Under the pieces are notes generated by a model. It was not told where the DNA came from. It saw nothing but the letters and a program-made list of their open reading frames with translations, and searched no databases. From NCBI GenBank assembly GCA_950097015.1, contig CATNEN010000008.1, positions 2,852,001 through 2,916,000 on the forward strand: DNA of 64,000 bases, read 5' to 3'. Origin of the DNA: Macrostomum hystrix (Eukaryota; Animalia; Platyhelminthes). This document shows positions 31,638-61,428 of the stretch, in pieces. The translations under genes were made by a program, and so were the position numbers. The first letter of the stretch is position 1. Every line of letters starts with the position of its first letter.

Positions 31638-31775
31638 TCAGGTTACGTAGACCCCAGCAGCAGCGATCTCCAGCTTGTACTCAGAGTTCTCATACTCAGT
31701 GGCGGGGTCGAGCGGCCCACCTGGCGTCGCAGCCGGCTGTCCGGCCTCAGCAGCAGTTTCTCCGCATCGGCTCAC
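31638..31775 (-). CDS. Gene A last exon, cytoplasmic tail ...PATEYENSEYKLEIAAAGVYVT*
   Basis: Phase-0 acceptor ctccag|GTG. The three-Tyr motif is conserved in gene C. Confidence 0.85.
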   Translation of the reverse strand: MSRCGETAAEAGQPAATPGGPLDPATEYENSEYKLEIAAAGVYVT

Positions 31776-34700
31776 CTGGAGGTCGCCAGCCAAAGTTTTC
31801 ATGCAGGCTTAAATATGATGTCTGAGCATGGAAGGCTTCTCAAACGAAACTTACCATCGCAACTTGCTCAATTTCGCCCTGAGCACGCCAACAAAGAGCT
31901 CGTCGACTCTGCAGAAAAGACTGAAAAAACGAAATAAAATAGATGCGATGCGGGACCATCTGGAAATGAGAACAAAGCACCAATTCATCTTCACCAATCG
32001 CATCTCTTACTCTCTTGACAATTCCTGCAATGATGGCTGCGGCAATGGCTGCTGTCCCGAATCCGCAGCCGAATGCAATCGCCATTGGCACCATTGCTGA
32101 TGCACTGCAGCAGCTCACCAGAGTCAGTTTGCTTTGAGCAGCCTGGACACCAGATGCCCCTGGAGCAATCTGTATTTCAGTGCAGTTGACGATGGCGCCT
32201 TTGAGCTCTCGGTATGCGGCATTGTCAAACTTCCACGTGCTGATGAGTACAGTGCCGTATTCATCAGGCACCTGCGAAATCGCACCGCACATAAATCAGC
32301 ATCTGACTGAGGCGAAATTTTCAAGCGGTGAAGAAACTCACTTGAGTCAGACGCGTGAGTTTCAAGACGCCAACTTCACCAGCATCAGCGCTGCATTTGT
32401 GCTCTGGCACCGAGTGAGATGAGGCTGATCTGAACTCCACCGTCACATCAGACAGACTCGTGCAATTGTGCGAATTCAGCAGGGAAATCGTCAAGTCTGA
32501 CCACGCAGCTGCAGATGGAGATGGATAGTCTTGAATAGCCCTTGGATAGTCTTGAAAGCTTACTTACAAAGTCGCATGTTCAAATCTTGTGAAACAAAGA
32601 GAAGCACAGTCCTGCGATCTACCTTTTGATTTGCCGCAAGTCCAACTGGCACTATTTTCTGAGACGTAGCTGAATGGGCTGGTGGTCGATCCATTGTGAG
32701 CAGCAGCGCAATGAACTGTACCCCTGCTTGCATCCAGCCAGCGATCTCCAACACTAACAAGACGCCACAGACTAACTCTTGAGCCGTTCTCGCTGGTGTT
32801 CTGAAATTTCGAAAAGCTAGAAAATTTTGCATTCCATTGCGTGCTCACAATTCAATATTGCTCATAGAATGAAGTCAAAACTCACAGTTGATAGCAGTAT
32901 GGATTGTTTAATGACTCCACCACCTACTGCATGGCACCTGTGCTCAGGTAGCGGGTGAGATTCTGAGGAGCTAAAGCTGACGATGATGTCTGACACAATG
33001 GTGCAATTGTGCGAATTCAGCAGCGTGACTGACACGTTTGACGGCGGGTCTGCAGGGAGGTCCGAGGCGCTTCGCTTTTACTGTTAGTTTTACACAGAGA
33101 GATGTGACACCTAACACAGCTGGGCAATGTGTACTGTCTATGGCACAAGTCACAGCTATAGCTACGACTTGGCAGCGAGAGGCTGTGTACAACTGTTCAG
33201 TCCGTGGACTGGGGGCCATCACGCGATCCTAAATTTCTATCCCAGCTAATTCTGGTACCGATTTGACAGCTGGGTGAACCGAATTGGGGAATCAAGGGCA
33301 CATATGATATCTCATGGGTTGAGATTCGAACTTCGGACCTCTTGGCCAGGAGTCCGACGCTCTAACTGCAGGTCTACAAGCTCTAAATAGATGCGTATCA
33401 AGCACTGCTATGAGTGTGGAATGTTGTCGGGAAGTATTAGACCACATGAAGTACGTACCCAAAGGACTGGCTGTGCATACCGTATTGTTCATTCTAGCAT
33501 GAGCGACAGTAAAATTTATAGCCAATTTTCTTACAAAGCACGGTGACCGATGCTGACTTGGCAGCAGATCCGGCTCTGCAAGTGTAGTTGCCTGAGTGCT
33601 GAGGCTCTGCTCTGAGAATCTCTACTAGCCTGCGATTTTCTCCAGTCTCCGAGCAGCTGCCGTTAGGAAAGCAGAGCTGAACTTGCCCCTGCACTCTGCA
33701 GCTCTCAGAGCCGCAGTGCAATGAGCATTCAACTGTGAAGCTTGTGTTTGCTACCACAGTCAAGTCTGGAGTCGATGCTGCAACGAAAGAGCTGTCACTG
33801 TTAGTCAAAACTGAGTATCCGTGCTCAAGGAAGCTGAGAATGGATGTGAGACTCACACAGCACAGTGACAACCGACTCCACTTCTGTTGAGTTCAGCTTG
33901 CACTTGTAGACTCCAGCGTCCTGAGGAGTTGAGCTCAAAATTTCCACAGACGCTTTTCTGGTGCAGCTGCCGTTCGGAAGACAGACCTGCGGCTCATGGA
34001 AAGTCTTGGAGTCAGGGTAGAGCAGTGAGCAGTTCACAGAGAGCTTTGAACCATGCGCGACCACTTGGTCAGGTGTTGCGGCTGCAGTTGATGGGATATG
34101 GCTTGTGAATGAGGATTCTATCAATCAAAAGCGTCACAACAATGGCTCACAGCCACTCATAAGTACATGGGATTGATCGCTTTGGTTTTTAAATTAGCAT
34201 TCGCATTTCCAAAATTGGCCTTCTCATGGGCACTTCTCAAAACATGTTGGTTGAAGACTAAATTAGGATACGTAATTATCCATGTACTCGCGAACAGAAC
34301 TCCGGGCTCAAAATCTGACGTATCATTTGATCATACTAATCATTTAGTGTTATGAAAAGCAGAGCCAGATGAACTCGCAGAAGCCGAGACTCACACAGCA
34401 AAGCCACAGCGGTCCGCTTCATGACATTCCCAGCAGCGCAGGTGTATTCACCTGCGTTCCCTGGCTGCGCACGGACAATGCTCAGATTCTTGCCCGACAC
34501 GTGGCTACCGTTTGGCAGGATCAACTGAAGGTCACCTAAATTCGGGCATTGCTCCGAGCTGTTGCAGTGCAGCCAGCAGCTCACAGAGAGCTCGGAGTTC
34601 ATCGCGACCACTTGGCTTGGAGAAGAGGCTTAAATGTTTTTTACGTTTACAAGATTAGCCGAAAGGTGCACTGCAATATTTCTACCTGAGAATCAATATT

Positions 34701-44142: not shown

Positions 44143-44283
44143 TCAGTCGCCCACAGCAACAATCTCAATGTACTCGGTGCAGCAGTCGCTGTCTGTGTCC
44201 TGCCCCCCCGCAGCAGCAGCAGCAGCAGTCGCTGGTTTGCACACAGTCAAGTAGCAGCACTCGGACTCGAAGCCGCTGGTTGT
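44143..44283 (-). CDS. Gene B last exon: TTSGFESECCYLTVCKPATAAAAAAGGQDTDSDCCTEYIEIVAVGD*
   Basis: Acceptor ctctgatttcag|ACA, phase 0. Contains YLTV (YxxV) and TEYIEI (TxYxxI). Confidence 0.8.
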   Translation of the reverse strand, partial: TTSGFESECCYLTVCKPATAAAAAAGGQDTDSDCCTEYIEIVAVGD

Positions 44284-47200
44284 CTGAAATCAGAGCAGCC
44301 TTGAGCACTCATTCAGTTTCGGAGAAAAACTAAAAAAACTGCTGACAAGTGACCATTAAAAGTGAGATTTATGAATAAGCAACGTGGCATTTTTCTTGGA
44401 CAGGACAGTCCCTGTTTGTTCGCTGAAGTCTAAGTGACTCATTGACTCACCTCATTGGCTGGACGAAACACATCAGGTGACACTTTAGATTTGTCCTGAA
44501 TGCCTGAGCTCAGCCTGAGCCCGGCTGCTGAAGGCTCAGTTGACGGCACTCGGAGCTGCAATGGAAAGGTTCAGAGCCGTCAGCTGCGGAAGGGCACGAT
44601 CGCCACATTTTCCTGCACTGACCTTCGAGATGAGCAGACAGCATGCAGCGCCGACTAGCACAACAACGAAAACGATGGTGGCTGAGACAGCAATCGTGAA
44701 AGTCGTGAGCCCAGCCCCAGGGCAGTCGAGTCGAGCCGTCGCGTAAACAGGTGAGCCGAAAGTCATGTTCTCAGGGAGGTTCTGTACCGCACTGCAGTTG
44801 ACAAAGACTTCGCTCCTGCTCATGTCATGCTCGACATCGCTGTCGAGCGTCCACGTGCTAAGGAGGCCCATGTTGACTGACACCTGCAGTTTCATTTGGT
44901 CCAGTGTGTTGCGTTGCGAGTGTTGTGTTACAGTGTGTTTCAAGAATCATACGGAATGCAACTCACCTGTGAAAGCAGAGAGACTTTTTTTCCCTTGAGT
45001 TCGGCAGCTTGAAAGTTGCACGTGTGCTCAGGCAGTGGGTGAGAAGCCGATGATCTGAACTGTACAGTTATTCTTGCCATGCTTTTGCAGCTTTCCAGGA
45101 ATTTTATCGAGAGACTCGATGGCGGGTCTGGAGGGAATTTGAGGTGCTGTCACAAATTGCGGCTGAAATATTTGTCATGAGTAAATATGAAAAAAATTCT
45201 AGATGCTCACTCACAGAACACGGTGACTGAGGTCTGCCTGCTGACAGAGCCAAGGCTGCAAGAGTAATTTCCTGAGTGCTCAGGGAGTGCTCGAGCCACT
45301 ACTATATTGTGTTCTGCAATGCAGGTACCGTTAGGAAGGTAGAGCTGGAGCCCGCTAGAGTTTGAGCACAGCTGTGAGCTGTTGCAGTGCAGCTCGCATC
45401 TCACTGCGAAACTCGAGTTGACGGCCACCACCTGATCCGCGGAGGCCGCTGAAAGAATATTTTGACCAGCTTGCATGATAATCAGATAAACTAATAGCGA
45501 TCGAATGCATTTTATGTGACTGAAGTCTCTGTGACGAGTAAATGGTACGGATGCACTCAGAGGCAGTGGAATCTAGTATATATGTGGAGTGAGTTTATCA
45601 ACGAGTCATGAATTCCATGAGTCATAGTTGATGGTCAAATTGGCCATTGGTGTTTCAATTGACTTGGGGTTTTGCCACCATGCCGTGGGCATTGTGTCAG
45701 TTAAGGTTTTGTGCTGGGGGCATTGTGTCAGCTGAGGTTTTGTGCTGTGGAAATTGTGTCAGCTGAGGTTTTGTGCTGTGGAAATTGTGTCAGTTGATGT
45801 TTTGTGCTGTGGACATTGTGTCAGCTGAGGTTTTGTGCTGTGGAAATTGTGTCAGTTGATGTTTTGTGCTGTGGACATTGTGTCAGCTGAGGTTTTGTGC
45901 TGTGGAAATTGTGTCAGTTGATGTTTTGTGCTGTGGACATTGTGTCAGCTGAGGTTTTGTGCTGTGGACATTGTGTCAGTTGAGGTTTTGTGATGTGGAC
46001 ATTGTGTCAGCTGAGGTTTTGTGCTGTGGGCATTGTGTCAGCTGAGGTTTTGTGCTGTGGACATTGTGTCAGCTGAGGTTTTGTGCTGTGGACATTGTGT
46101 CAGCTGAGGTTTTGTGCTGTGGACATTGTGTCAGTTGATGTTTTGTGCTGTGGACATTGTGTCAGCTGAGGTTTTGTGCTGTGGACATTGTGTCAGCTGA
46201 GATTTTGTGCTGTGGACATTGTGTCAGTTGATGTTTTGTGCTGTGGACATTGTGTCAGCTGAGGTTTTGTGCTGTGGACATTGTGTCAGTTGGGGTTTTG
46301 TGGTGTGTGCTTTTTACTTTTGACCTTTTTCAACTTATATTGTAGTTCAATAAACAATATTTTTTGGTGTTATTACACCATTGACACCTTTGCTTGTGTC
46401 ATTAATTATGTTTCTTTCTCTTATAATTTATTATTGTTTTTGCATTCAGCTTTCGACCTTCGTCATTGGATGAATTTTCCCCTGACCAGTTTCTGCTTTT
46501 TGGTTTTCATTGTTTCACTAATTGGTCCAAGCGACAAATTGAAGCGCAAAATGTCCCGCTTTCGGGCCCTTATTATTCTTTAAAAGTTACGAGCATAAAA
46601 AAAGTAGAAAATCTGCTCACAGAGCACGGTGACTGAGGTCTGCTTGCTGACAGAACCAAGGCTGCAAGAGTACTTTCCAGAGTGATCAGGCAGAGCTTGA
46701 GCCACTGCTGTCTTGTGTTCTGCAATGCAGGTACCGTTCGGAAGGCAGAGCTGGAGTCCGCTAGAGTTTGAGCACAGCTGTGAGCGGTTGCAGTGCAGCT
46801 CGCAGCTCACAGTGAAATTCGAGTTGATGGCCACCACCTGATCCACGGAGGCCGCTGAAAAATATAAGTTACCATTGAAATTTCGAACTCAAATTGTGCA
46901 CTTACTGTTTGAGAAATTACTTTAACATTAAACTCACTCAGCACACTGACACTGGATGTGTTCGCGACCGAGCCGAATCTGCACCTGTAGTCACCTGAGT
47001 GCTCAGGCTGAGCACTGCCAATGTGCAGCTCATGGCCGTTTATGCAGCTGTCGTTGGGAGAGCACAGCTGCAGCTCGCTTGAGCTCGAGTTGAGCTCTGC
47101 TCCATCGCAGTCCAGCAAGCAGCTCACGCTGAACTTTGAGCTCTGAGGCACCAGCTGAGGTGCTGAGGACTCTGGAGATTTACAAATCATCCAATCGACA

Positions 47201-48129
47201 TTGCTAAATCATCGAAATTTAAGAATTTCCCTTCCACAACAATGTGTCCATAGTAAAAGACCCGAACTCACTCAGCTGCACAGTCTGAAGCCTGAGATCT
47301 GCGAAGCTCATGAAGTCGGTAGGATAAGATGACACAGTGATGTTCCTTCGCAGCAGCAAGTGTCTCACCTGGAGTTCAGATGAGATCTCAGTGGGATCCA
47401 GAACTCAACAGAGCACAACTCAAGGCACAGAGCAGGTCTCACCTCCGCTGAGCAGTTCACGGTGAAGTTCTCACCAGCCTCGATACGCGCCTGCTTGCTC
47501 ACCGTCAGGCCGCACAGTCTCCAGAGCTGCTGAGACTTGTTAAACTGGCTGCTCATGTTTCTTGAGCTGCAGTGATCACCTGAGAACAGCTGACTGCTGC
47601 TGCTCGATGTCCAGATCTCGATGTCTCTGGCTCTCGCGTAGACATCTGTAGCGCTATCTAAAAGTGAGAACTTCACGACTAAGCAGTGGAAGCTGAAGTG
47701 CATGGAAAAAATTGAGCAGTGACTCACCCTCTCTGCCCTTCACAGTGACCGATCTGATGAGCACTGACTCATTCAGCTGCACTGCGAACCAATGAAATTC
47801 TCCGTCTGCATGGTCTTTGTTTTTGCTGTGGAAGAACCTGTAGCTGTAAGGTTTGTCCTTTACAACGTTTTCCTCATCAGTGTAGTTTCTGTTGCTGAAG
47901 CAAGTCGGTCCGTCATCGAAGGACGACTGCCAGGAGCTGAGCACTCGGCTCCTGCGAATCAGGAACTCACCTGCAGTGTGTGAAAATGGAGTGCTGTAAT
48001 GCCTTCAAACATTTTTTAGTTGAAACTGAAAACAAAACTAAAACACTCACAGTCACCCATGACGCCAGTCATTGCTGAGAAGAGCAGCAACAGCAGCAGC
48101 AGCAGTCGTATGAGCAAAGCAGATACCAT
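44143..48129 (-). CDS. Receptor gene B: SP + F-type-lectin-like + 3 Ig + split Ig-like stalk + TM + ITIM-like/ITSM tail (about 667 aa, 11 exons)
   Basis: Exons: 48129-48051 (SP MVSALLIRLLLLLLLLFSAMTGVMGD). Lectin: 47970-47728, 47657-47443, 47368-47272. Ig: 47171-46938, 46854-46621, 45448-45215. Stalk: 45127-44967. Stalk+TM: 44883-44623 (TM LTTFTIAVSATIVFVVVLVGAACCLLI). Tail: 44555-44451, 44283-44143. The total is 2004 nt with matching phases and no internal stop. Confidence 0.87.
45708..46290. repeat. 31-bp minisatellite TTGTGTCAGCTGAGGTTTTGTGCTGTGGACA (gene B intron between Ig2 and Ig3)
   Basis: Read directly. Confidence 0.95.
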
Positions 48130-49672
48130 CTGAGCTCAGTATGCAATCCGCTAGAGAATAGTCTCACAAAACTTTCTGAGCAGTCTTCAATTCGCACTGC
48201 CTGCAATTCAGTTCTTTTCCGCTACTTAAGCAAGTGGCGGGTAAGACGTCAATGCTGCTTACCTCTCGGCCTGAGATTTACAAGCCGAAAGTTCTAAATT
48301 TGCTGTCTCAGCACTTTAAATATCCAGCAATATGTTTCTCGCTAAGTAAACCAATTCATACTCCGGCTATTTCTTGTAAGACAGGCAGTGAAATAATAGA
48401 ATATTTGACGCCTATTATTGGAGAAATGACCCTGAAAGTGTTGTTTATTGCATGTGTCGCTTGACTGACCAGCTGAAGCAGCTAGTTTCCAGGGCTACTT
48501 GGCTTGAAATGCGGCAAATGATGAGTCTGTCGTTGAAGAGATTGAGCAACTGAAGATGTGAATTGTTTCATCATGACACTTGTCATTCTCGTAGAACATT
48601 ATAAGAAGCATGTCTCGCTTCTTGAATGAGCTCATTCCATCGGCTGGTCTCCTCTTTCATGCTCACTTTTTGTGCGGGTGAAATTTTGAATCTCTCGGCT
48701 ATAAAACGCGACTTGACTACAACAGTCATTAACAAGTTCGCTGTCAGGTTCTGTGCAGCGTCTCAAGCAGTGCTTTTTCACTGCAAATTCATGCCCGAAA
48801 TGGGATATTAAACTTTAAAGCAGTACCTCATTTCATGAACTTGTACCCCATCCAGCAGTTTAAAAAAATTGAAAATCCATTATCCACAGTGCCATCTTCT
48901 GCTGGCCATTTAAAGTTATTTGCTCACGACGATCAGTCACAACACAACTCGCGCGTATATAAAAAGTACATGAATTAAATGTTTTAGTATGCTAAAATAT
49001 CGTCTACTCGTAATAATGTATTCGTCTTTTCGTCAGCATTATTTGACAGTCAAATAAAAAAGCAAATTAATTGCAGATCTTTTTTACCTCCCGAGTAATA
49101 CCCCAAATCGGCCAAGTAGTACCCAATGGGTACTGGTAAAAAACCCTGGTCTCAAGCCTCGATGCCTCGATGCCTCAATGGCACGAATAAAGATTGAGCA
49201 ATTGTCAGCCAGCAGACAGTCGACAAAACGCCGAGTTCGAATCTGTCAGCGTCGGTAAGCTTCTCATGCACCGGCTGCGCACAACATCGACTTGCTGTAC
49301 GGCGGCACGACTGTACAACGACTTCGGTCAGAGACGGACGCAAAGGTATGGCGCGAAGGTATGGGTCATGGCGTACACACAACCAATGAGGAAAAGGCAG
49401 CAGATCAGCGCAAAGCATCATTTGTCTAACTTTGCGAAGGTGAGAGCACTATCTAGCAGTTTATTATTGTATGAAATGTAGGCTCGATGCAGAGAGTACC
49501 AGTTTTAGTATAAGTTTATAGCATTTGATAGTGATGTACAATTTATTTTGTTAAAATAAAGCTCTAGCTTTATTCAGCAACTGCACGCGATCAGTTAGTT
49601 CAGTATTGTAATGAATTTCCGAATATTGCATTCGAATATTGCTAGATATGTTAGATATTTCAAGGTTTTACA

Positions 49673-50645
49673 GGATATGGAAGCTAGTGCTGGATATGGA
49701 AGCTAGTGCTGGATATGGAAGCTAGTGCTGGATATGGAAGCTAGTGCTGGATATGGAAGCTAGTGCTGGATATGGAAGCTAGTGCTGGATATGGTAGATA
49801 GTCCTGGATATGGAAGCTAGTGCTGGATATGGAAGCTAGTGCTGGATATGGAAGCTAGTGCTGGATATGGAAGCTAGTGCTGGATATGGAAGCTAGTGCT
49901 GGATATGGTAGATAGTCCTGGATATGGAAGCTAGTGCTGGATATGGTAGATAGTCCTGGATATGGAAGCTAGTGCTGGATATGGAAGCTAGTGCTGGATA
50001 TGGAAGCTAGTGCTGGATATGGTAGATAGTCCTGGATATGGAAGCTAGTGCTGGATATGGTAGATAGTCCTGGATATGGAAGCTAGTGCTGGATATGGAA
50101 GCTAGTGCTGGATATGGTAGATAGTCCTGGATATGGAAGCTAGTGCTGGATATGGAAGCTAGTGCTGGATATGGTAGATAGTCCTGGATATGGAAGCTAG
50201 TGCTGGATATGGTAGATAGTGCTGGATATGGTAGATAGTCCTGGATATGGAAGCTAGTGCTGGATATGGTAGATAGTGCTGGATATGGAAGCTAGTGCTG
50301 GATATGGTAGATAGTGCTGGATATGGTAGATGGTGCTGGATATGGTAGATGGTGCTGGATATGGTAGATAGTGCTGGATATGGTAGATAGTGCTGGATAT
50401 GGTAGATGGTGCTGGATATGGTAGATGGTGCTGGATATGGTAGATGGTGCTGGATATGGTAGATGGTGCTGGATATGGTAGACAGTGCTGGATATGGTAG
50501 ATAGTGCTGGATATGGTAGATGGTGCTGGATATGGTAGATGGTGCTGGATATGGTAGATGGTGCTGGATATGGTAGATGGTGCTGGATATGGTAGATAGT
50601 GCTGGATATGGTAGATAGTGCTGGATATGGTAGACAGTGCTGGAT
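49673..50645. repeat. 19-bp minisatellite TGGATATGG(AAGC/TAGA)TAGTGC
   Basis: Read directly. Explains the YPALSTISSTIYHIQH ORFs. Confidence 0.95.
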
Positions 50646-50759
50646 ACTGCTGACATGAACAGAAGCACTCAGCACTATATTGTGATTGTGATGGTGCGGC
50701 TTCATGACCTGTTGTGTTCAAGCCCGCTCATAACACTGCTTAAATACTGAAGAACCATA

Positions 50760-51370
50760 TCCATCTCAAGGCTGATCATATCCACCTCAAGGCTGCTCAT
50801 ATTCTCCTCAAGGCTGCTCATATCCACCTCAAGGCTGCTCATATCCACCTCAAGGCTGATCATATCCACCTCAAGGCTGATCATATCCACCTCAAGGCTG
50901 ATCATATCCACCTCAAGGCTGATCATATCCACCTCAAGGCTGATCATATCCACCTCAAGGCTGCTCATACCCACCTCAAGGCTGCTCATGCCCACCCCAA
51001 TACTGCTCATATCCACCTGAATGCTGCTCATACCCACCTCAAGGCTGCTCATACCCACCTCAAGGCTGCTCATTCCCACCTCAAGGCTGCTCATACCCAC
51101 CTCAAGGCTGCTCATACCCACCCCAATACTGCTCATATCCACCTGAATGCTGCTCATACCCACCTCAAGGCTGCTCATACCCACCTCAAGGCTGCTCATT
51201 CCCACCTCAAGGCTGCTCATACCCACCTCAAGGCTGCTCATACCCACCTCAAGGCTGCTCATACCCACCTCAAGGCTGCTCATACCCACCTCAAGGCTGC
51301 TCATACCCACTCCAATACTGCTCATATCCACCTGAATGCTGCTCATACCCACCTCAAGGCTGCTCATATT
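50760..51370. repeat. 21-bp minisatellite ATCCACCTCAAGGCTGCTCAT
   Basis: Read directly. Explains the MSSLEVG ORF. Confidence 0.95.
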
Positions 51371-52149
51371 CACCTAGAAGCTGCTCGTGTCTACAATTTA
51401 AGAGTAGGGCATTGTTTGTCAGTTCAGCGTATCTTGAAATTATCACTCCTCATGCAGGCAACGACCTTCGATCAGGTCACATAAACTCCAGCTGCGGTCT
51501 CCAGCTTGTACTCAGAGTTCTCATACTCTGTGACGCCATCCGCAGATCCAGCAGCACCAGCTACGAGTTCGGCGTCAACTGTCCGTGTCCCGTCTCGACC
51601 CACCTGAAGTACAAGAGGGTCAGCTGCAACAATTGACTTGAGCAAATATTTCTACAGACACAAAACTCTCATCTCATGACAGTCAGCTCACCATGCCGAT
51701 CATCTCAGCCGCACGGTGACTTGGGTCCAGGCGAGGTTGTCCCCAGCAGAACTGAGCAGTCTGAGAGCCCCTGGCTGCTGCCACCTGAAATAGCTTTAAG
51801 AGTTTGAGAATCTTCTGACTTCAGCACAGACAGCAAACTGGAGCACTGCATTGAGGGCTCACTCTGCAGAACACGCAGGCCATGACGACCGCAGTGACGA
51901 ATCCTGACCCGAATCCAGAGGCGAAGTACTTCAGTCCGTCGTTCTCTTCAGGCAGCCCGGATGTCGGAGAACAGCTGAGCTGAGCTCTGGCACTGCGGAC
52001 GGCCTTAAACGGAACTCCTGTCGGCAGAGTCTGAGTAGCTGTGCAAACGATGCTGAGAACACTGCTCAGTTCCTCACTAGGGACATCGAGCTCTGCGAGT
52101 GACCACAGGCTGACGGCGCCTTCCATGCCTGATTGCTGAAACACCGAGT

Positions 52150-52350
52150 TACTCAGTGAGTCATCGATCAGTCATCCAATGAGTCATCGGTCAGTCACTC
52201 AATGAGTCATTGGTCAGTCACTCAGTGAGTCATTGGTCAGTCACTCAGTGAGTCATTGGTCAGTCACTCAGTGAGTCATTGGTCAGTCACTCAGTGAGTC
52301 ATTGGTCAGTCACTCAGTGAGTCATTGGTCAGTCACTCAGTGAGTCATCG
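52150..52350. repeat. 23-bp minisatellite TCAGTCACTCAGTGAGTCATTGG (continues at 56088-56250 beyond the retrotransposon)
   Basis: The same unit flanks both sides of the gypsy element. Each unit contains TGAGTCA. Confidence 0.9.
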
Positions 52351-55300
52351 TGTTGTGTAGTGATTGAAGTAGAAAACAGATTTTTTTTAGATTCCAAATC
52401 GAGAAGCTTTGAGAGCTTATGGTCGCTCTGTTGCCGTATATTTATAGGCTAGGATGTTAGATATCGAAGGTTCTAGAAATATTCCAGGTGCTGCCGTCGG
52501 TCAGTCGGCACGCAGCGCCCATCGTCTTGACAATCCGCAGCGGCACCGAGAGCCGCGTTCCGAGCTTGCCCCGTCGTGTTGGACGCTGCACCCGAACCCA
52601 GTCGCCGGCGCGCAGTGCGGTCCGTGTAGGCTGCCGTCCGCTGCTGGCGCCCTTGGATTTGCTGGGCCATCTCGGTATGCGCAACCGCGGTGTCCTTAGA
52701 CGGGGACAGGAGAGACAGGGCTGTGCGCCATCGCCTGCCCAGCATCAGCTCCGCCGGGCTCTTCCCAGTCTGGGCATGTGGAGTGCTGCGGTAAGCCTCA
52801 AGGAACTGCAGCAGCGCGTCTTGCATCGGAATGTTCGCCGCCCTGGCCGCTCGGATGCTGTCCATCAGCGTCCTGTTGAGTGTCTCGGTCTTGCCGTTGG
52901 TGCTTGGACGGTAAGGGCTGGTCTTCAGGTGCTGAATGCCCCTGAATACCTCAGAAATCCATCGCCGAACTGTGCTCCGTTGTCGGTGAGGACCTTCTCG
53001 CAGAGGCCCCAGCGTGCGAAAAGGCTGCGCAGCACCTTGCAGATCGTCTCAGTGGTGATGCTTGAAGTTGCAAAGACCTCTGGCCACTTGCTGTGCAGAT
53101 CCGTAATGACCAGTAGGACACGTGATGGTGCCGGTGCCGCCTGCAGCTCGCCCACGATGTCGATGGCGATCTCTGTCTACGGTGTAGTCGGCCATGGCAG
53201 AGGCTGCAGCGGAGCCGGTCGCAGCTTGAAATTCTTCTCCGCTGTCTCGCACGCGCCGCAGTCCCGGACGAACGTCTCGACATCGGCGTCCATCTTTGGC
53301 CACCAGGCGAACTCGAGGAGCTGCTGCTTGCTGCTGCTGCACCACCCCCGGATGTCCAGAATGCACCGCCTCCAGAAGCTCGCGCCGCAGCTGCTGGGGA
53401 ATGATGGCTCGTTCTTGGAAAGCCAGGCAGGCGCCGTCCTGCCAGACGCTGAGGTGCTCGCGGACCTTGAAGTACGGCCGCAGCTCGCTATGCGGTGTAG
53501 AGCTCCAGTTGCCGCTTGTGACGTGCTGAATCACCTGTCGCAGAACCTCATCCTCGGCTGTGGCTATCGCTAGCTGCTGCGGGGTAACAACCCGTACCTT
53601 AGGCATCGCAGTCCGGTAGCTGGACGATGTTCATGTCGGACCCGCAGCTCCACCTTGACAGCATGTCGGGCACGAAGTTGCGGTTGCCCGGCAGGTATCG
53701 CACGTGGAAGTCGTACTGTTGAAACCGGTCGCACCACCGTTGGATGCGCAGCGGCCGATGTCCGGTGCCGCTGGGTCCCAGCAGGAGCTGGCGCAGCGCT
53801 TGGTGGTCGGTCCGCAGCTCGAAATGGCGCCCGTACAGGTAGTAGTGCCACTTCTCCATGGCCCTCAGGATCGCCAGCGCTTCTCGCTCGTTCGCTGCGT
53901 ATCGCTTCTCTGTCTCGGTCAGGTCTCGGGCGGCGAAGGCAATCGGCCTCTCGATGCCGTCTTGGACCAGGGACAGCTGCGCACCGAGGGACTCTGCACT
54001 GGCGTCGCTAGTGAAGATCGTCTCGGCCCCTGGGTCGAAGTGAGCAAGGACCGGCGGACTACAGATAGCCTCTTTCAGCGTCTCGATCGCCTTCTCGCAC
54101 TCCGTCGACCATTCGAACACCGCGTCGCCTTTCAGCAGAGGCCGCAGTGGCGCCGTGACCTCAGCGAAGTTGGGTACGAACCGCATCAGATAGTTGGCGG
54201 ATCCCAGGAACGCCTGCAGCTCCTTCCTGTTGGTCGGCGGGCGCAGCTGGCTGAAAGCTTTGGTCTGACTCTCAGACGGTCGCATGCCGTCGGCTGAGAA
54301 GATGAAGCCAAAGAACTCAATCTCAGTCCTCCGCAGCTGGCACTTGTCCTTGTTGGCAGTGAGACCGGCGTCCTCCAATCGCTTCAGCAGTGCTCGCAGC
54401 CTCGAGTCGTGCTCGGCTTCAGTTGCTCCGAAGACGATGAAGTCGTCCAGGATGTGCTCAACACCGTGCAGATCAGACACCAGGTCGTCCAGCGTCCTCT
54501 GGAATGCCGCCGGTGCCGAAGCAAGCCCGAACGGAACCCTGCAGTAGCGATACAGACCCTGGTGAGTAATGAATGCCGTCAGGTCACGTGATGACTCGTG
54601 CAGCTTCATCTGCATGTATCCTGCCTTGATGTCGATCTTGAAGAACACGCTGCCTCCGACAGCTTTGATCTTGGCCGAGATTTCGTCCAGCTGCGGCATC
54701 GGGTGCCTCCAGACGGTTCAGCTCCTCGCCGACTTGTTGCTGCCTAGTGAGCGGAAGTCGACGGAGCGGCTGCTGCACTGGTGGCACCGCTGCGTTGATC
54801 CTCGGTTTGTGCAATGCGCCCTTGCAGAGACCGATCGAGCCGCTGAAGACAGTTGGGAACTCTCGCTCGATGTCTACGCTGGCGATTTCGGCGTCGATCT
54901 CAGCTGGCGGCTGCAGTTGCACGTGGAAGCCCAGCTTCTCCATCAGGTCGCGGCCGATAAGGTTCTCGCCAGACCTCGTGACGTGGAAGTCGTGCTGCCG
55001 ACTGTGGTGCTTGACGGGCACTGTTGCGATCCCAGCTAGGGCGATCAGCTTCCTGCCGTAGCCTCATCGACGACGGTCTTAGGCGAATGTCGCCCAAGCT
55101 TCGCGCAGTGGCCTCGTTCAGCAGGGACACCATGGCACCGCAGTCGACCATCAGGCTGACGATCTTTCAAATGCTGCCAAGCAGAAGCTCGGCGCGGAAC
55201 TCGTCGTTGCCGTTGACTGCGTAGATCGTCTCTTCCGCGCTGACCTGCATTGCATTGCTGCGGCAGCATCAGCTGAAGTGATTCAGTTTGCCGCAGTTGT

Positions 55301-56088
55301 TGCACTTCTTGCCGTGCGCGGGACATTGGGCTTCGGAATCATGGCTGCGGCCGCATCGCTGGCAGGATCCTCCGGCTTGCTGCCCCGGCTTCTTCTTGGA
55401 CGGAGCGCCATGGTGACCTCGGGGTCAGGCCTCCTGCACAGCCTGGACGTTCCCTGAAGAGCCGGCTGCTGCCATCGCCTTGCTGCCTGCCGCTGCCTCC
55501 TCGATAGTCGTCGCGATCACGATGGCTTGGTCCAGTGTCAGCCTGGCGGCGTCCTCAGTCAGCAGGCGCTCACTAATCCGGCTGCTGCTGGTCTTCTGGG
55601 CCAGCTGGTCGCGGATCATCTCGTCAGTCATTGCTCCGTAGTTGCAGGTTGCTGAGAGCTCGCGCAGTGCTGCGACGAACGTGACTGCGTCCTCTCCGGG
55701 CAGCTGATGTCGCTCCCGGAAATCGGTGACGCGCCAACATCACGTTTGGCCTGTCGCCAAACACAGTCGTCAGCAGGTCGCGGGTTTGCCAGAAGGTGTG
55801 GCCGTCGACAATCGCGTTGTGTGCCCCTGGCAATCCGCTGCCCTTCGAAACCGAGCAGGTGCAGCAGCATGTTGGGGCTCCTCTTTGCCAGTCGCGTAGC
55901 TTCCTCTGTTGGAGCTTCGCCCTCTGCCGGCCATCAGTCCAGATCTGCGCCGCTTGGCAATAGATATCGAAAGTGTCGAGCCATCGATTCCATGGAACTG
56001 CTGGAGGTCCGCTTGCCGGCAGGTACGGTGTCGGTGGGCTAACGTTGAGGGCCATCCTCGTCGCCAGTTGTTGTGTAGTGAATGAAGT
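52351..56088 (-). mobile_element. Degenerate Ty3/gypsy LTR retrotransposon (gag-PR-RT-RH-INT) in a gene C intron
   Basis: The LTR 3' end ...CACTACACAACA occurs at both 56069-56088 and 52351-52370. PBS TGGCGACGAGG is at 56056-56066 and gag ATG at 56055. Motifs: protease LMVDCGA; RT KIDIKAGY...PFGLASAPAAFQR...ILDD; RNase H TSDAS...EREALA; integrase HSGHPG, DLHSKWPEV, LTDNGAQF. There are several frameshifts, an RT N-terminal deletion and both LTRs are truncated. Confidence 0.92.
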
Positions 56089-58377
56089 CATTGGTCATTC
56101 ATTGGTCAGTCATCGAATGAGTCATTGGTCATTCATTGGTCAGTCATCGAATGAGTCATTGGTCAGTCACTCAATGAGTCATCGGTCAGTCACTCAATGA
56201 GTCATCGGTCAGTCAGACAGTGAGTCATCGGTCAGTCACTCAGTGAGTCATTGTTTAGTAATTCACTGAGTGCATTGAAACCCACCTGTGAAATGAGTCG
56301 CAGTGATTTCTTACGGACTACTCCAACATCACAGCTGCAGCTGTGCTCAGGCATGGGCTGAGCAGCTGAGGATCTGAACAGCACGGATGCGTTTAAAAGA
56401 TTCTTGCAATTCGCATTGTTGGGCAACGACAATAAAATTGACACACTCGATGGTGGGTCTGCATGTGAGGTAAATATTTTCATTAGATTTTGAAAGCAAT
56501 GTTGCAGATGGAAGTCATGCAGCTAACTCACAGAGCACGGTGACTGAGGTCTGCTTGCTGACAGAACCAAGGCTGCAAGAGTACTTTCCAGAGTGATCAG
56601 GCAGAGCTTGAGCCACTGCTGTCTTGTGTTCTGCAATGCAGGTACCGTTCGGAAGGCAGAGCTGGAGTCCGCTAGAGTTTGAGCACAGCTGTGAGTTGTT
56701 GCAGTGCAGCTCGCAGCTCACAGTGAAATTCGAGTTGATGGCCACCACCTGAGCCACGGAGGCCGCTGAAAAATTTAAGTTACCATTGAAATTTCGAACT
56801 CAAATTGTGCACTTCCTGCTTGAGAAATTACTTTAATATTAAACTCACTCAGCACACTGACACTGGATGTGTTCGCAACCGAGCCGAATCTGCACCTGTA
56901 GTCACCTGAGTGCTCAGGCTGAGCACTGCCAATGTGCAGCTCATGGCCGTTTATGCAGCTGTCGTTGGGAGAGCACAGCTGCAGCTCGCTTGAGCTCGAG
57001 TTGAGTTCTGCTCCATCGCATTCCAGCCAGCAGCTCACGCTGAACTTTGAGCTCTGAGGCACCAGCTGAGGCGCTGAGGTTTCTGGAGATTTACAAATCC
57101 TCCAATCGACATTGCTAAATCATCGAAATTTTAGAATTTCCCTTCCACAACAATGTGTCCAAAGTAAAAGACCCGAACTCACTCAGCTGCACAGTCTGAA
57201 GCCTGAGATCTGCGAAGCTCATGTAGTCCTCATAGCTGGAGAAGTCGCTTGCTGTGATGTTCCTTCGCAGCAGCAAGTGTCTGACCTGGAGTTCAGATGA
57301 GATCTCAGTGGGATCCAGAACTCAACAGAGCACAACTCAAGGCACAGAGCAGGTCTCACCTCCGCTGAGCAGTTCACGGTGAAGATCTCACCACGCTGGA
57401 TTTGCTGCTGCTTGCTCACCGTCAGGCCGAGACTTGTTAAACTGGCTGCTCATGTTTGTTGAGCTGCAGTGATCACCTGAGAACAGCTGACTGCTGCTGC
57501 TCGATATCCAGATCTCGATGTCTCTGGCTCTCGGGTAGACTTCTGTAGCTCTATCTAAAAGTGAGAACTTCACGACTAAGCAGTGGAAGCTGAAGTGCAT
57601 GGAAAAAATTGAGCAGTGACTCACCCTCTCTGCCCTTCACAGTGACCGATCTGATGAGCACTGACTCATTCAGCTGCACTGCGAACCAATGAAATCCTCC
57701 GTCTGCTTGGCTTCTGTCTGTGCTGGAGAAGAACCTGTAGCTGTAAGGTTTGTCCTTTACAACGTTTTCCTCATTGGCGTAGCTTCTGTTGCTGAAGCAA
57801 GTCGGTCCGTCATCGAAGGACGACTGCCAGGAGCTGAGCACTCGGCTCCTGCGAATCGGCAACTCACAGTCTGCAGTTGCCATGGAAATAGGCAGTGCTA
57901 GGAGCAGTAGAAGCATTGTGGACTTGGCCAATTCTAGAATCTTGAAATCAGTAAATATTTGTGCTGCTGAAATCAACCCAGAAATGAAAGCGGATTCACT
58001 AACGGCCTATTTGAATGAATCGGCACCTGCGATATGATTTGATGATCCAGAGAGTAACACTGTTCACTGCGAATCTAATAAAAGGCTGACGAGGATCTAA
58101 ATGAAGCTCGCCTATACCTGGTGAAGCAGTTTCCGTACATCAAACCTTCTAGAAGTTCCTCAGTCATAATTGGCACAATCTGCTTTATTTCGAAGCTTGG
58201 ACCACAAATAGTAACAGGATATTGTGACGGTTTCTTAACTTTGTTTATTGCTGATTGCAGTGGACTAGTTTGGATACCGAAGATGGCTGAATGTTAGCAT
58301 TGTTGAGCCTTTCTTAACGCTATTGAAATCATTTGAGGATGTGTGAAACTCCACTAATTGTGGCAGGCTAGCTATGA

Positions 58378-61300
58378 GTGCGGTATTGTAGGGATGGGTG
58401 CAGTATTGTAGGGATGGGTGCAGTATTGTAGGGATGGGTGCAGTATTGTAGGGATGGGTGCAGTATTGTAGGGATGGGTGCAGTATTGTAGGGATGGGTG
58501 CAGTATTATAGGGATGGGTGCAGTATTATAGGGATGAGTGCAGTATTGTAGGGATGGGTGCAGTATTGTAGGGATGAGTGCAGTATTGTAGGGATGGGTA
58601 CATTATTGTAGGGATGACTGCAGTATTGTAGGGATGGGTACATTATTGTAGGGATGACTGCAGTATTGTAGGGATGAGTGCAGTATTGTAGGGATGGGTG
58701 CAGTATTGTAGGGATGGGTGCAGTATTGTAGGGATGGGTGCAGTATTGTAGGGATGGGTACATTATTGTAGGGATGAGTGCAGTATTGTAGGGATGGGTG
58801 CAGTATTGTAGGGATGGGTGCAGTATTGTAGGGATGGGTGCAGTATTGTAGGGATGGGTACAGTATTGTAGGCATGGGTACAGAATTGTAGGGATGAGTG
58901 CAGTATTGTAGGGATGAGTGTAGTATTATAGGGATGAGTGCAGTATTGTAGGGATGAGTGCAGTATTATAGGGATGGGTACAGTATTGTAGGGATGGGTA
59001 CAGTATTGTAGGGATAGTGCAGTATTGTAGGGATGGGTGCAGTATTGTAGGGATGGGTGCAGTATTGTAGGGATGGGTACAGTATTGTAAGGATGAGTGC
59101 AGTATTGTAGGGATGGGTGCAGTATTGTAGGGATGGGTACAGTATTGTAGGGATGAGTGCAGTATTGTAGGGATGGGTGCAGTATTGTAGGGATGGGTAC
59201 ATTATTGTAGGGATGAGTGCAGTATTGTAGGGATGGGTGCAGTATTGTAGGGATGGGTACAGTATTGTAGGGATGGGTACAGTATTGTAGGGATGAGTGC
59301 AGTATTGTAGGGATGGGTGTAGTATTGTAGGGATGAGTGTAGTATTGTAGGGATGGGTGCAGTATTGTAGGGATGGTTGTAGTATTGTAGGGATGAGTGC
59401 AGTATTGTAGGGATGGGTGCAGTATTGTAGGGATATATATATATATAGACGCAAAAAGTTAGGTAGCTTTTGCGCGCACGCGCTCGCAGAACAGTCGGGA
59501 GGGGCAGGCCATGGCGGACTGGGGATCAAGTCCGATAGCCTGCAAGTCAGCCAACAGAGTGGTAATTAGCGTCACAGTTCTTCCTTGGCCGCGGCGCAGC
59601 CGCTCGGTCGGTTGGTGCAGGAGGACCAGCGCAAGCGGGTTTCGCTCGCCGCGACCGTGGCTCCTCAGACAGTGGCCCAGCAGCATCTGGCGGCGCCGGC
59701 GCAGGGTGACGCTCAGGGCTGGGACGCCGGCGCGAACCATCAGGTCTCTGGACGGCAGCCTCTCCGGGTAGTGCACGCCCAGGGCGTGGCGCAGCAGGGA
59801 CCTGTATAGCGCGTCCAGGGCTTTCTCTCGCGTGGCGGTCATCGGCACTGCTTCCATGCCGTACAGAAGGATAGGCTCAACGGCAGCGCGGAAGAGGCGC
59901 ACCTTCAGGCTGTCTCTTGCAGCAGAGTTGAAGACGTTCCTGAGAAGGTGCGCCGCACGCCAGGCCTGATTCCTTCTGTCGGAGACGATGGAGTCGGGAC
60001 TCATCACCAGGGAGCCGAGGTACCGAAAGTCCTCGCACACCGCGATGGCGTCTCCGTTGGGCAGATCTAGTGCCGGGGCGGTATCAGTGCCCACGTGCAG
60101 CACTTCTGTCTTCAGTGCGTTGATCATCAGTCCAACCCGAGCGCCCTCCTCGCAGAGTCTTAAGAGAGCGCGTTGGGCAGCAGCTGGATCGCGACAGAGG
60201 AATGCGATGTCGTCGGCATACGCAAGAGCCGGCAGCGGGACTGCAGGGTGTCGGGAGCTTCGACGTGGGACTAGCACATAGCCGTCGTCATCATGGAGAG
60301 ACCGGCGCAGCACGTAGTCCACGACCATGATGAAAAGCAGAGGAGCCAGCGTGTCGCCCTGAAGGACGCCAGAGCTTGTGCTGAACTCATCAGTGGGGCC
60401 GTCGCTCGACTGAACAAATGCCCTGGAATCGCTGTACAGATCCATCACCGCAGCCACCAGTGCAGGGGGGACGCCGTAGTAGGACAGCAGCCATGCAATC
60501 GCTAGCCTGGCCACCGAGTCAAAAGCCTTCCGGAAATCCACGAAGACAATCGACACGGAGCGCAGGCGGGTCTTGCAGGCCTCAATGATTGAGCGGATGG
60601 TTGCAACCTGCTCAGTGGTGGACCTGCCTGGCCGAAAACCGCTCTGGAGACTCAGCAGCAGTGGGTTGAGACCTGGCAGGAGGCGGTTGCGCAGCACAGC
60701 ATTCAGCAACTTTGCCGTGGTACATTCCAGCGCAATGCCACGCTGGTTGTCCAGGCTTGTAGAAGCCCCCTTCTTCGGGATGGAAACGATCTTGGAGGTG
60801 CGCCATTGTGGGGGCGCGCAGGCGGCCGCGTCGCCTCCAAGACTGCAGTGCTTGTTCAGCACCTCGGTGATGGCGGGGGTCAGCTCTGGTAGCTTCAGGA
60901 CCCTGGGAGGAATCGTATCCACCCCAGCAGCGGCGTCGGCACGCATGGTCCTCAGAGCCCGGCCAGTATTGTAGGGATGGGTGCAGTATTGTAGGGATGG
61001 GTACATTATTGTAGGGATGGGTACAGTATTGTAAGGATGAGTGCAGTATTGTAGGGATGGGTGCAGTATTGTAGGGATGGGTGCAGTATTGTAGGGATGG
61101 GTGCAGTATTGTAGGGATGGGTGCAGTATTGTAGGGATGGGTGCAGTATTGTAGGGATGGGTGCAGTATTGTAGGGATGGGTGCAGTATTGTAGGGATGG
61201 GTGCAGTATTGTAGGGATGGGTGCAGTATTGTAGGGATGGGTGCAGTATTGTAGGGATGGGTGCAGTATTGTAGGGATGGGTGCAGTATTGTAGGGATGG

Positions 61301-61428
61301 GTGCAGTATTGTAGGGATGGGTGCAGTATTGTAGGGATGGGTGCAGTATTGTAGGGATGGGTGCAGTATTGTAGGGATGGGTGTAGTATTGTAGGGATGG
61401 GTGCAGTTTTGTAGGGATGGGTGCAGTT
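58378..61428. repeat. 20-bp minisatellite GTGCAGTATTGTAGGGATGG, split by a LINE (58378-59435 and 60964-61428)
   Basis: Read directly. Confidence 0.95.
59436..60963 (-). mobile_element. 5'-truncated non-LTR retrotransposon, RTE/RTEX-like RT, about 500 uninterrupted codons, (TA)n tail
   Basis: Motifs SKIVSIPKKG, NQRGIAL, QSGFRPGRST, VFVDFRKAFDSV, GVLQGDTLAPLLF, LAYADDIA, FRYLGS and EPILLYG. The stop is at 59459-59461, followed by a short UTR and a TATATA tail. No endonuclease is present. Confidence 0.92.

What the first reader, a model, noticed from the sequence alone, without database searches (positions are those of the whole stretch)
44143..57916. Paired-receptor logic: near-identical ectodomains (B, C) on two different signalling tails
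Seen: B and C share lectin+Ig1+Ig2. B ends in YLTV...TEYIEI, while C ends in TEYENSEYKLETAAGVYVT, almost identical to gene A's TEYENSEYKLEIAAAGVYVT. Established: vertebrate paired receptors (Siglec-5/14, Siglec-11/16, KIR, Ly49) combine matched ligand-binding domains with inhibitory versus non-inhibitory signalling. YxN is the Grb2 SH2 consensus. Inference: B is an inhibitory form and A/C an alternative, possibly activating, class.
Basis: partly seen in the sequence, partly recalled or inferred. Interest (0 to 1): 0.85.

Follow-up and report, generated by a model that had tools for sequence, protein, structure and literature searches.

The report
Flatworm receptor pair, one partner broken
Two neighbouring flatworm surface-receptor genes share a recently copied outer part but carry two different, old signalling tails; one of the two is broken by a frameshift, so this looks like a vertebrate "paired receptor" only in outline.

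Summary
B (44143-48129, minus strand, 11 GT-AG exons, 667 aa, intact) and C (51472-57916) share 1,371 bp at 93.7% identity, introns included. This tract covers the lectin-like head and two Ig exons, and stops about 5 nt after the Ig2 donor. Outside it the genes are old paralogs (membrane-proximal exon 43% aa, TM exon 32%, unalignable tails). B ends in CCYLTV...TEYIEI. C ends in the same three-tyrosine motif as A. Both tail types recur in Macrostomum lignano proteins, so two conserved tail classes are real.

The paired-receptor reading is only partly supported:
- C has a 20-bp deletion inside the lectin domain. It removes a family-invariant W..CG and shifts the frame to a stop.
- C has also lost a family-invariant His and carries a sense-strand retroelement in an intron.
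- The lectin head is the most diverged part of the tract (84% aa, dN/dS about 3), not a matched binding site.
- C has no activating hallmark: no ITAM, no basic TM residue, and a long tail.

Best reading: a recent gene-conversion tract between tandem paralogs of two tail classes, with C now a pseudogene or null allele. The scan has noted this receptor family before on other pieces of this genome.

The parts
44143..48129 (-). Gene B, intact, 667 aa. Exons: signal peptide 48129-48051; lectin a 47970-47728, b 47657-47443, c 47368-47272; Ig1 47171-46938; Ig2 46854-46621; Ig3 45448-45215; membrane-proximal 45127-44967; membrane-proximal part 2 plus TM 44883-44623; tail exons 44555-44451 and 44283-44143.
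   Evidence: All borders are GT-AG and the reading frame is open end to end. The equivalent borders in C coordinates (lectin b to c, Ig1 to Ig2, Ig to Ig) and B's Ig3 to membrane-proximal junction, seen as a loose end, appear as joints in spliced contigs of B-like or paralogous transcripts in runs X1 and X2.
44143..44283 (-). Last exon of B, with the class I tail motifs: ITIM-like CCYLTV and canonical ITSM TEYIEI. The two tyrosines are 27 residues apart.
   Evidence: The same layout occurs in M. lignano P0003 and P0019 (CSYLSV ... TVYLEI).
46616..47977 (-). B copy of the shared tract: 3' end of intron 1, lectin exons a-c, Ig1, Ig2 and the introns between them.
   Evidence: blastn gives 93.7% over 1,371 bp. 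Homology ends about 5 nt past the Ig2 donor.
56527..57877 (-). C copy of the shared tract.
51472..57916 (-). Gene C. Exons: 57916-57625 (signal peptide fused to lectin a, no intron 1); lectin b 57554-57360; lectin c 57285-57183; Ig1 57082-56849; Ig2 56765-56532; membrane-proximal 56458-56286; membrane-proximal part 2 plus TM 52135-51863; tail exons 51784-51692 and 51603-51472. The frame is broken in lectin exon b.
   Evidence: the CDS is 1,729 nt, not a multiple of 3, with a stop after residue 145. All other exons are open in the expected frames.
57429..57430 (-). Site of the 20-bp deletion in C (B keeps 47532-47513). It removes the codons for QQLWRLC and shifts the frame. The resulting stop codon is at 57390-57388.
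   Evidence: W..CG is present in every other family member aligned.
57725..57727 (-). Ser codon in C where all other family members have His (FFHS becomes FFSS).
   Evidence: In the alignment this His sits where the fucose-binding His would be. That placement is my inference.
52350..56086 (-). Decayed Ty3/Gypsy-type retroelement (gag, protease, RT-RNase H and integrase pieces with frameshifts). It lies in sense orientation inside the C intron between the membrane-proximal exon and the TM exon.
   Evidence: ORFs. Pfam RVT_1, RT_RNaseH and RT_RNaseH_2 hits, E 1e-23 to 1e-31.
52147..52350 (.). Minisatellite flanking the retroelement. Its partner lies at 56086-56277, and a related array at 3211-3479.
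   Evidence: The element appears to have inserted into an intronic minisatellite, so the C gene natively spans it.
51472..51603 (-). Last exon of C, with the class II tail: TEYENSEYKLETAAGVYVT*.
31638..32508 (-). Gene A 3' exons: membrane-proximal 32508-32341; TM 32271-32011; tail exons 31920-31855 and 31775-31638. Class II tail.

Best explanation
B and C are adjacent, same-strand members of a Macrostomum-restricted family of single-pass receptors. The layout is signal peptide, F-type-lectin-like head, Ig domains, a membrane-proximal domain, TM and a tyrosine-motif tail. The family has two old TM-plus-tail modules:
- Class I (B): TM of the type TFxxxVSA..VFV, and a tail with CxYLxV plus TxYxEI.
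- Class II (A, C): a GFxxGF-type TM, and a tail ending (T/S)(E/D)YENSEYKLE..G(V/I)Y...

An ectopic, two-ended gene conversion of about 1.37 kb replaced the head of one gene with that of its neighbour. Intron divergence since then is about 2%. The direction B to C is slightly favoured, because B also holds an older tandem copy of the Ig2 exon. Afterwards the lectin exons of both copies changed mostly by replacement substitutions in a few patches.

C then, or in this haplotype, lost 20 bp inside the lectin domain. C also carries a sense-oriented retroelement in an intron. As assembled, C cannot make a lectin-headed receptor. It is a recently disabled gene or a null allele.

Shown: the gene structures, the tract, the lesion, conservation of the two tail classes, and splicing at the predicted borders. 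Inferred: that phosphorylated class I tails recruit an SH2 phosphatase or adaptor, that class II tails recruit Grb2/Drk through pYxN, and that the two classes therefore signal differently.
For: - Tract with sharp ends inside two otherwise old paralogs.
- B is intact and C is frameshifted.
- The deleted W..CG and the substituted His are invariant in A, B, D and all M. lignano relatives aligned.
- A B-like transcript contig reads straight through the only alternative donor that could rescue C's frame, and splices at the normal exon b donor (X1 record 4).
- Tail classes are conserved in M. lignano proteins and in locus L001.
- Divergence is 6.1% in lectin exons against 2.1% in Ig exons and introns. 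Lectin dN is 0.072 and dS 0.024. Derived states are split 11 to 13 between B and C.
- The retroelement has RT and RNase H domains and lies in sense orientation.
- The head folds as a galactose-binding-like jelly roll, and its nearest solved structures are the fucolectins 3cqo and 1k12.
Against: - The frameshift is C's only disabling lesion; every other C exon is open. It is therefore very recent, or allelic, or, less likely for 20 bp, an assembly error.
- A 203-nt contig of run X2 matches C's TM exon with 1 mismatch, so at least that exon is transcribed. Read-through from the upstream sense retroelement could also explain this.
- No read crossed the deletion, so transcripts of an undeleted C allele are not excluded.
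- dN greater than dS in the head after conversion suggests both copies were under selection for some time.
- The direction of conversion is not resolved.
Confidence: 0.6

Rival explanations
1. A working paired receptor. C is normally intact, and the 20-bp deletion is a null allele or an assembly error. B (ITSM plus ITIM-like tail) and C (YxN tail) bind related ligands and give opposite or different signals, and conversion keeps their heads alike, as in Siglec-5/14.
For: - The genes are adjacent and share a conversion tract.
- The two tail classes are conserved.
- C has a single lesion and all other exons are open.
- C's TM exon is present in run X2 contigs at 99.5% identity.
- In vertebrate pairs the non-inhibitory partner is often lost by polymorphism (PMC13358205).
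Against: - The lectin head is the least similar part of the tract (84% aa, dN/dS about 3) and C has lost the invariant His.
- C has no ITAM, no basic TM residue and a 70-residue tail.
- No RNA contig lay on C's own membrane-proximal or tail exons, or on any C-specific junction.
- C has a sense-oriented retroelement in an intron.
Confidence: 0.2
2. C escapes the lesion by alternative splicing. The donor at 57420 joined to the Ig1 acceptor at 57082 gives an in-frame 521-aa receptor with a truncated head. This would act as an Ig-only or decoy receptor on a class II tail.
For: - The alternative model is in frame with GT-AG borders.
- M. lignano UniProt models of the P0002 group join lectin exon a directly to an Ig exon.
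Against: - It would delete the last third of the jelly roll, including strands conserved across the family.
- The one transcript contig covering this site in a B-like relative does not use that donor.
- The P0002-type models are automatic predictions, and some run into the next gene.
Confidence: 0.08
3. There was no conversion. The shared 1.37 kb reflects a plain recent duplication, or a collapse or mis-join in the assembly of a repeat-rich region.
For: The region is rich in satellites and the genome has many young duplicates.
Against: - Both ends of the tract lie inside genes whose remaining exons are only 25-43% identical in protein yet collinear.
- The two copies differ at 49 substitutions and several indels, so they are not one collapsed copy.
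- C's native membrane-proximal exon follows directly after the tract.
Confidence: 0.05

Closest known systems
[quoted passage not shown]
   Same: The genes are closely linked. A sharp-edged tract makes the outer domains alike while the TM and tails stay different. One partner has an ITSM plus an ITIM-like tail. The other partner is disabled, as is common for the non-inhibitory partner in humans (PMC13358205).
   Different: The glycan-binding candidate is a separate F-type-lectin-like domain, not a V-set Ig. The non-ITIM partner has a long tyrosine-rich tail, with no basic TM residue and no ITAM route. The head is the most diverged part of the tract. No function has been tested. The family is unrelated by descent, apart from generic Ig domains.
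F-type lectins (fucolectins; AAA 1k12, MsaFBP32 3cqo)
   Same: Jelly-roll fold, and these are the best structural matches. His and Arg-x-Asp sit at comparable places.
   Different: The motif HX24RXDX4(R/K) is not met: B has H-x31-RED-x7-R. Pfam gives only a sub-threshold F5_F8_type_C hit. The review read for the domain combinations (PMC5712786) lists CTL, PXN, CCP, TM and FA58C partners, not Ig plus an ITSM tail.
ITIM/ITSM receptors of the PD-1, SLAM, CD33 type
   Same: A membrane-distal TxYxx[VI] about 25 residues after an ITIM-like tyrosine. The similarity in layout to PD-1 and CD33 is from my own knowledge.
   Different: The first motif has Cys at position -2, which is outside the I/V/L/S consensus. 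No SH2 partner is known in flatworms for this family.
Macrostomum lignano uncharacterised proteins A0A1I8GJD6, A0A1I8JJS2, A0A1I8H6B9 and BOX15_Mlig012084g1
   Same: Same family. The lectin exon is 59-75% identical to B, and both tail classes are present.
   Different: None is closer than about 75-80% to B or C. They carry only automatic names, and no pair with a shared head is visible among them.

Membership tests
Paired activating/inhibitory immune receptors | Closely linked genes | tested here: met
   B and C are on the same strand, 3.3 kb apart (48129 to 51472).
Paired activating/inhibitory immune receptors | Highly similar ligand-binding ectodomains, kept alike by gene conversion | tested here: inconclusive
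   The tract is 1,371 bp at 93.7% with sharp ends. Ig1 and Ig2 are 96-97% identical in aa, but the lectin head is only 84% with dN/dS about 3 and is broken in C.
Paired activating/inhibitory immune receptors | Inhibitory partner: long tail with ITIM (I/V/L/S)xYxx(L/V), often plus ITSM TxYxx(I/V) | tested here: inconclusive
   B has a canonical ITSM, TEYIEI. The other motif is CCYLTV, with Cys at -2, so it is not a canonical ITIM (consensus from PMC13358205).
Paired activating/inhibitory immune receptors | Activating partner: short tail, basic residue in the TM, signalling through an ITAM adaptor or its own ITAM | tested here: not met
   C's tail is about 70 residues. There is no Yxx[LI]x6-12Yxx[LI], and no K or R in the TM core, only a boundary Arg. 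The same holds for A, P0002 and P0005.
Paired activating/inhibitory immune receptors | Both partners intact and expressed | tested here: not met
   C is frameshifted. The only C-specific RNA evidence is one contig on the TM exon.
Paired activating/inhibitory immune receptors | Opposite signalling outputs | not testable with these tools
   This needs phosphopeptide pull-downs or reporter assays.
F-type lectin domain | F-type jelly-roll fold | tested here: met
   The AF2 model of relative P0018:22-212 has pLDDT 78.9 and pTM 0.82. The top Foldseek hits are 3cqo and 1k12, E 2e-5, TM 0.50-0.58.
F-type lectin domain | Fucose-binding motif HX24RXDX4(R/K) | tested here: not met
   B reads H-x31-R-E-D-x7-R. 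C lacks the His.
Immunoglobulin superfamily domain | Profile match and the two-Cys, DxGxYxC signature | tested here: inconclusive
   Pfam Ig_2 scores 25.6 bits against a cut-off of 27, plus weaker Ig family hits. All Ig exons have ..FxVxC.. and HSGxYxC.
Siglecs | N-terminal V-set Ig domain with the sialic-acid-binding Arg | tested here: not met
   The N-terminal domain is a galactose-binding-like jelly roll, not an Ig domain.

The most novel reading that the evidence does not exclude
Macrostomum has independently evolved a true paired-receptor system. Lectin-headed Ig receptors of two opposing tail classes sit side by side, gene conversion keeps their heads in step while selection diversifies the binding loops, and the broken C is a segregating null allele, like human SIGLEC14 or SIGLEC16 nulls.
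Probability: 0.15. Interest if true: 0.75.

Novelty: new variant of a known kind. Interest (0 to 1): 0.42.

Why it matters
If the two tail classes really signal differently, this family would show that swapping one recognition head between signalling modules by gene conversion arose outside vertebrates, in a regenerating flatworm that can be studied by RNAi. As it stands, it is a clear example of head homogenisation between anciently diverged tandem paralogs, followed by rapid head divergence and loss of one partner. The receptor family, with an F-type-lectin-like head, Ig domains and an ITSM or YxN tail, was not found in the searched literature.

Tried and rejected
- Pfam on single exons gave only sub-threshold F5_F8_type_C and Ig_2 hits.
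- My first reading of an 'Ig0' domain between the lectin and Ig1 was wrong. Alignment with relatives shows it is the C-terminal third of the lectin domain.
- The idea that C is a recent A/B chimera ('A-like ends') was rejected. Outside the tract, C is about equally far from A and B in the membrane-proximal and TM exons, and only the tail class is shared with A. C's 5' end resembles neither.
- Family-wide incongruence between head and tail was not shown. The AU test for B-class monophyly is not significant (p 0.164) and the tree is mostly unresolved.
- The exon-versus-intron excess of differences (p 0.0003) is weakened because the differences sit in only 4-5 patches. Four patches all falling in exons has a chance of about 0.2 by length alone (my arithmetic).
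- An exact look-up of C's first-exon ORF in public assemblies found nothing.
- RNA runs: only two small runs held any of the locus. No contig crossed the deletion or C's Ig2 to membrane-proximal to TM junctions.
- Literature searches for the family and for the tail strings found nothing relevant.
- I did not test whether SHP2/Csw or Grb2/Drk exist in this species.
Full report
**What the window holds**

The window is eukaryotic. All relatives of the genes in question found in two very large protein libraries are from the flatworm Macrostomum lignano: 11 hits, named, and 9 hits. The closest public M. lignano locus I fetched (L001, NIVC01002544.1) is only 73-80% identical in DNA. The window is therefore either a paralogous cluster or a related species.

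Four family members lie on the minus strand:
- D, about 40232-37591
- A, about 37470-31638
- B, 48129-44143
- C, 57916-51472

**Gene B**

B has 11 exons. Every border is GT-AG, and the open frame is 667 aa. In order it has:
- a signal peptide;
- a head encoded by three exons;
- three Ig-type exons, each 234 nt and in phase 1;
- a membrane-proximal domain split over two exons, the second of which also holds the TM;
- two tail exons.

The tail reads ...ECCYLTV...TEYIEIVAVGD*, with the tyrosines 27 residues apart.

**RNA evidence**

I could lay only two small public runs. Their contigs are spliced, so they contain RNA. Their joints fall at or within a few bases of my predicted borders:
- Ig exon end 56532 joined to Ig exon start 56765;
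- Ig1 to Ig2;
- lectin exon b to exon c;
- a loose end that is B's membrane-proximal exon start, with 1 mismatch in 30.

Most of these contigs are 90-95% like C, so they come from B-like or other paralogous transcripts.

**The head**

What I first took for an extra Ig domain is the last third of the head domain. An AlphaFold model of the relative P0018:22-212 has pLDDT 78.9 and pTM 0.82. Its best solved matches are two fish fucolectins, 3cqo and 1k12 (E 2e-5, TM 0.50-0.58). CBM32 and discoidin modules follow.

The published fucose motif HX24RXDX4(R/K) (PMC5712786) is not met. B reads H-x31-RED-x7-R. 'F-type-lectin-like' is a fair description; lectin activity is untested.

**The shared tract**

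B 46616-47977 and C 56527-57877 are 93.7% identical over 1,371 bp. The homology begins in the 3' part of B's intron 1 and ends about 5 nt after the Ig2 donor.

Beyond the tract the two genes remain collinear but old:

| Part | B vs C, aa identity |
|---|---|
| Membrane-proximal exon | 43% |
| TM exon | 32% |
| Tails | not alignable |

C is no closer to A in these exons (36% and 25%). Only the last exon links C with A, at 59%, almost all of it in the final 20 residues.

The pattern is therefore an internal, two-ended replacement between old tandem paralogs: a gene conversion or double crossover. It is neither a fresh duplication nor a recent A/B chimera.

B also has a third Ig exon that is 90-91% identical to Ig2 of both genes. 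This older tandem exon copy within B makes B the slightly more likely donor.

**C is broken**

- With the splice sites that B uses, C's CDS is 1,729 nt.
- A 20-bp deletion between 57430 and 57429 (B keeps 47532-47513) shifts the frame. A stop follows at 57390-57388, after residue 145.
- The deleted codons include a W..CG that is present in A, B, D and every M. lignano relative aligned.
- C has also replaced a family-invariant His by Ser (codon 57727-57725). In the alignment this His sits where the fucose-binding His of F-type lectins would be, which is my inference.
- All other C exons are open. This is a single, young lesion, or an allele.
- One alternative donor (57420) joined to the Ig1 acceptor would restore the frame. 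It would discard the last third of the jelly roll. The one transcript contig that covers this site in a B-like relative reads through that donor and splices at the normal one (X1 record 4).
- The intron between C's membrane-proximal and TM exons holds a 3.7-kb decayed Ty3/Gypsy-type element in sense orientation. The same minisatellite flanks it on both sides, which shows that C natively spans it.
- Run X2 has a 203-nt contig on C's TM exon with 1 mismatch. That exon is therefore transcribed, possibly by read-through from the element.
- No contig lay on C's own membrane-proximal or tail exons, and none crossed the deletion.

**The heads are not matched**

Divergence between B and C inside the tract:

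| Part | Differences | Percent |
|---|---|---|
| Lectin exons | 32/523, plus indels | 6.1% |
| Ig exons | 10/468 | 2.1% |
| Introns | 7/339 | 2.1% |

- Fisher's test for lectin exons against the rest gives p 0.0003.
- In the head, dN is 0.072 and dS 0.024, a ratio near 3 (p 0.06).
- In Ig1 plus Ig2, dN is 0.017 and dS 0.028.
- Protein identity is 84% in the head against 96-97% in the Ig domains.
- At the 28 differing head positions, B keeps the family state at 11 and C at 13. Both copies have changed.
- The differences sit in 4-5 patches. Patchy repair or small secondary conversions could explain them as well as diversifying selection, and the statistics overstate the number of independent events.

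Either way, the part most likely to bind ligand is the least alike. This is the opposite of what the paired-receptor idea needs.

**The tails**

Two classes are real and old.

Class I (B; M. lignano P0003, P0019, P0001; gene 2 of L001):
- CxYLxV, then about 25 residues later TxYxEIVA.
- The second motif is a canonical ITSM. The first has Cys at -2 and is only ITIM-like.
- L001 gene 2 has Phe in place of the second Tyr.

Class II (A, C; P0002, P0012, P0005, P0018):
- The tail ends (T/S)(E/D)YENSEYKLE..G(V/I)Y.. at the C-terminus.
- It has three tyrosines, and the first sits in a YxN context.

Each class has its own TM type: TFxxxVSA..VFV for class I and GFxxGF for class II (my reading). TM and tail thus behave as one module.

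Class II shows none of the marks of vertebrate activating partners as defined in PMC13358205. Its tails are 36-70 residues long, with no ITAM and no basic residue in the TM core.

That YxN is a Grb2-SH2 preference, and that ITSM or ITIM motifs recruit SHP-type phosphatases, is established knowledge. That they do so here is inference.

**Family-wide test**

In a head-domain tree, B and C pair (support 91/94) and the rest is unresolved. With C removed, the data do not reject a clade of class I heads (AU p 0.164).

Head-tail incongruence is therefore proven for this pair only. Class I tails do occur on two different ectodomain layouts: with Ig and membrane-proximal domains in B and in L001 gene 2, and without them in P0019. 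This hints at module shuffling.

**Verdict**

The interpretation captures a real resemblance: adjacent genes, a converted head and two tail classes. It overstates that resemblance, because one partner is disabled, the binding head has diverged, and 'activating' has no support.

The scan has already noted this receptor family on other pieces of the same genome (for example s1-332672 and s1-306092). Those notes gave me the organism lead, which I checked.

Noticed in passing
window 40232-37234: Gene D (lectin exons 40232-39993, 39896-39685, 39619-39508, plus about four Ig exons down to 37591) has no TM or tail of its own before A's lectin exon (37470). A has no visible signal-peptide exon, and D's last Ig exon and A's lectin exon are both phase 1. 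D plus A may therefore be one gene with two lectin-Ig modules.
   Followed up: partly
window 57916-57868 versus 48050-47971: C lacks the phase-1 intron that A, B and D have just before the lectin domain. C's start codon and signal-peptide codons align with the 3' half of B's intron 1. C's signal peptide may therefore be exonised intron sequence.
   Followed up: partly
window 45448-45215: B's third Ig exon is a tandem copy of its Ig2 exon (90.6% nt, 62/77 aa). The intron between them holds a 62-bp tandem array of about 10 copies (45681-46307).
   Followed up: partly
window 49673-51394 and 58374-61427: Long satellite arrays, with periods of about 19-20 bp and 21/63 bp, fill the B-C intergenic space and the region upstream of C. 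They give long spurious ORFs.
   Followed up: no
window 47799-47886, 47477-47490 and 47300-47340 (B coordinates): B and C differ in 4-5 short patches of the lectin exons, almost all by replacement changes, while the two lectin introns (70 and 74 nt) are identical. In the 47799-47830 patch C keeps the family-typical SQADGG and B is the derived copy.
   Followed up: partly
L001 17700-17900: In the M. lignano cluster NIVC01002544.1, the second gene has a class I tail in which the ITSM tyrosine is Phe (TEFLKIVADGD*). It is a natural variant lacking one phosphorylation site.
   Followed up: no
P0002, P0012-P0015, P0014: UniProt models of M. lignano family members join lectin exon a directly to an Ig exon or run on into the next tandem gene. 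The public annotation of this family is unreliable.
   Followed up: no
window 54125-54532: Contigs of both public runs match the retroelement's RT region at about 96-98%, so related elements are transcribed.
   Followed up: no
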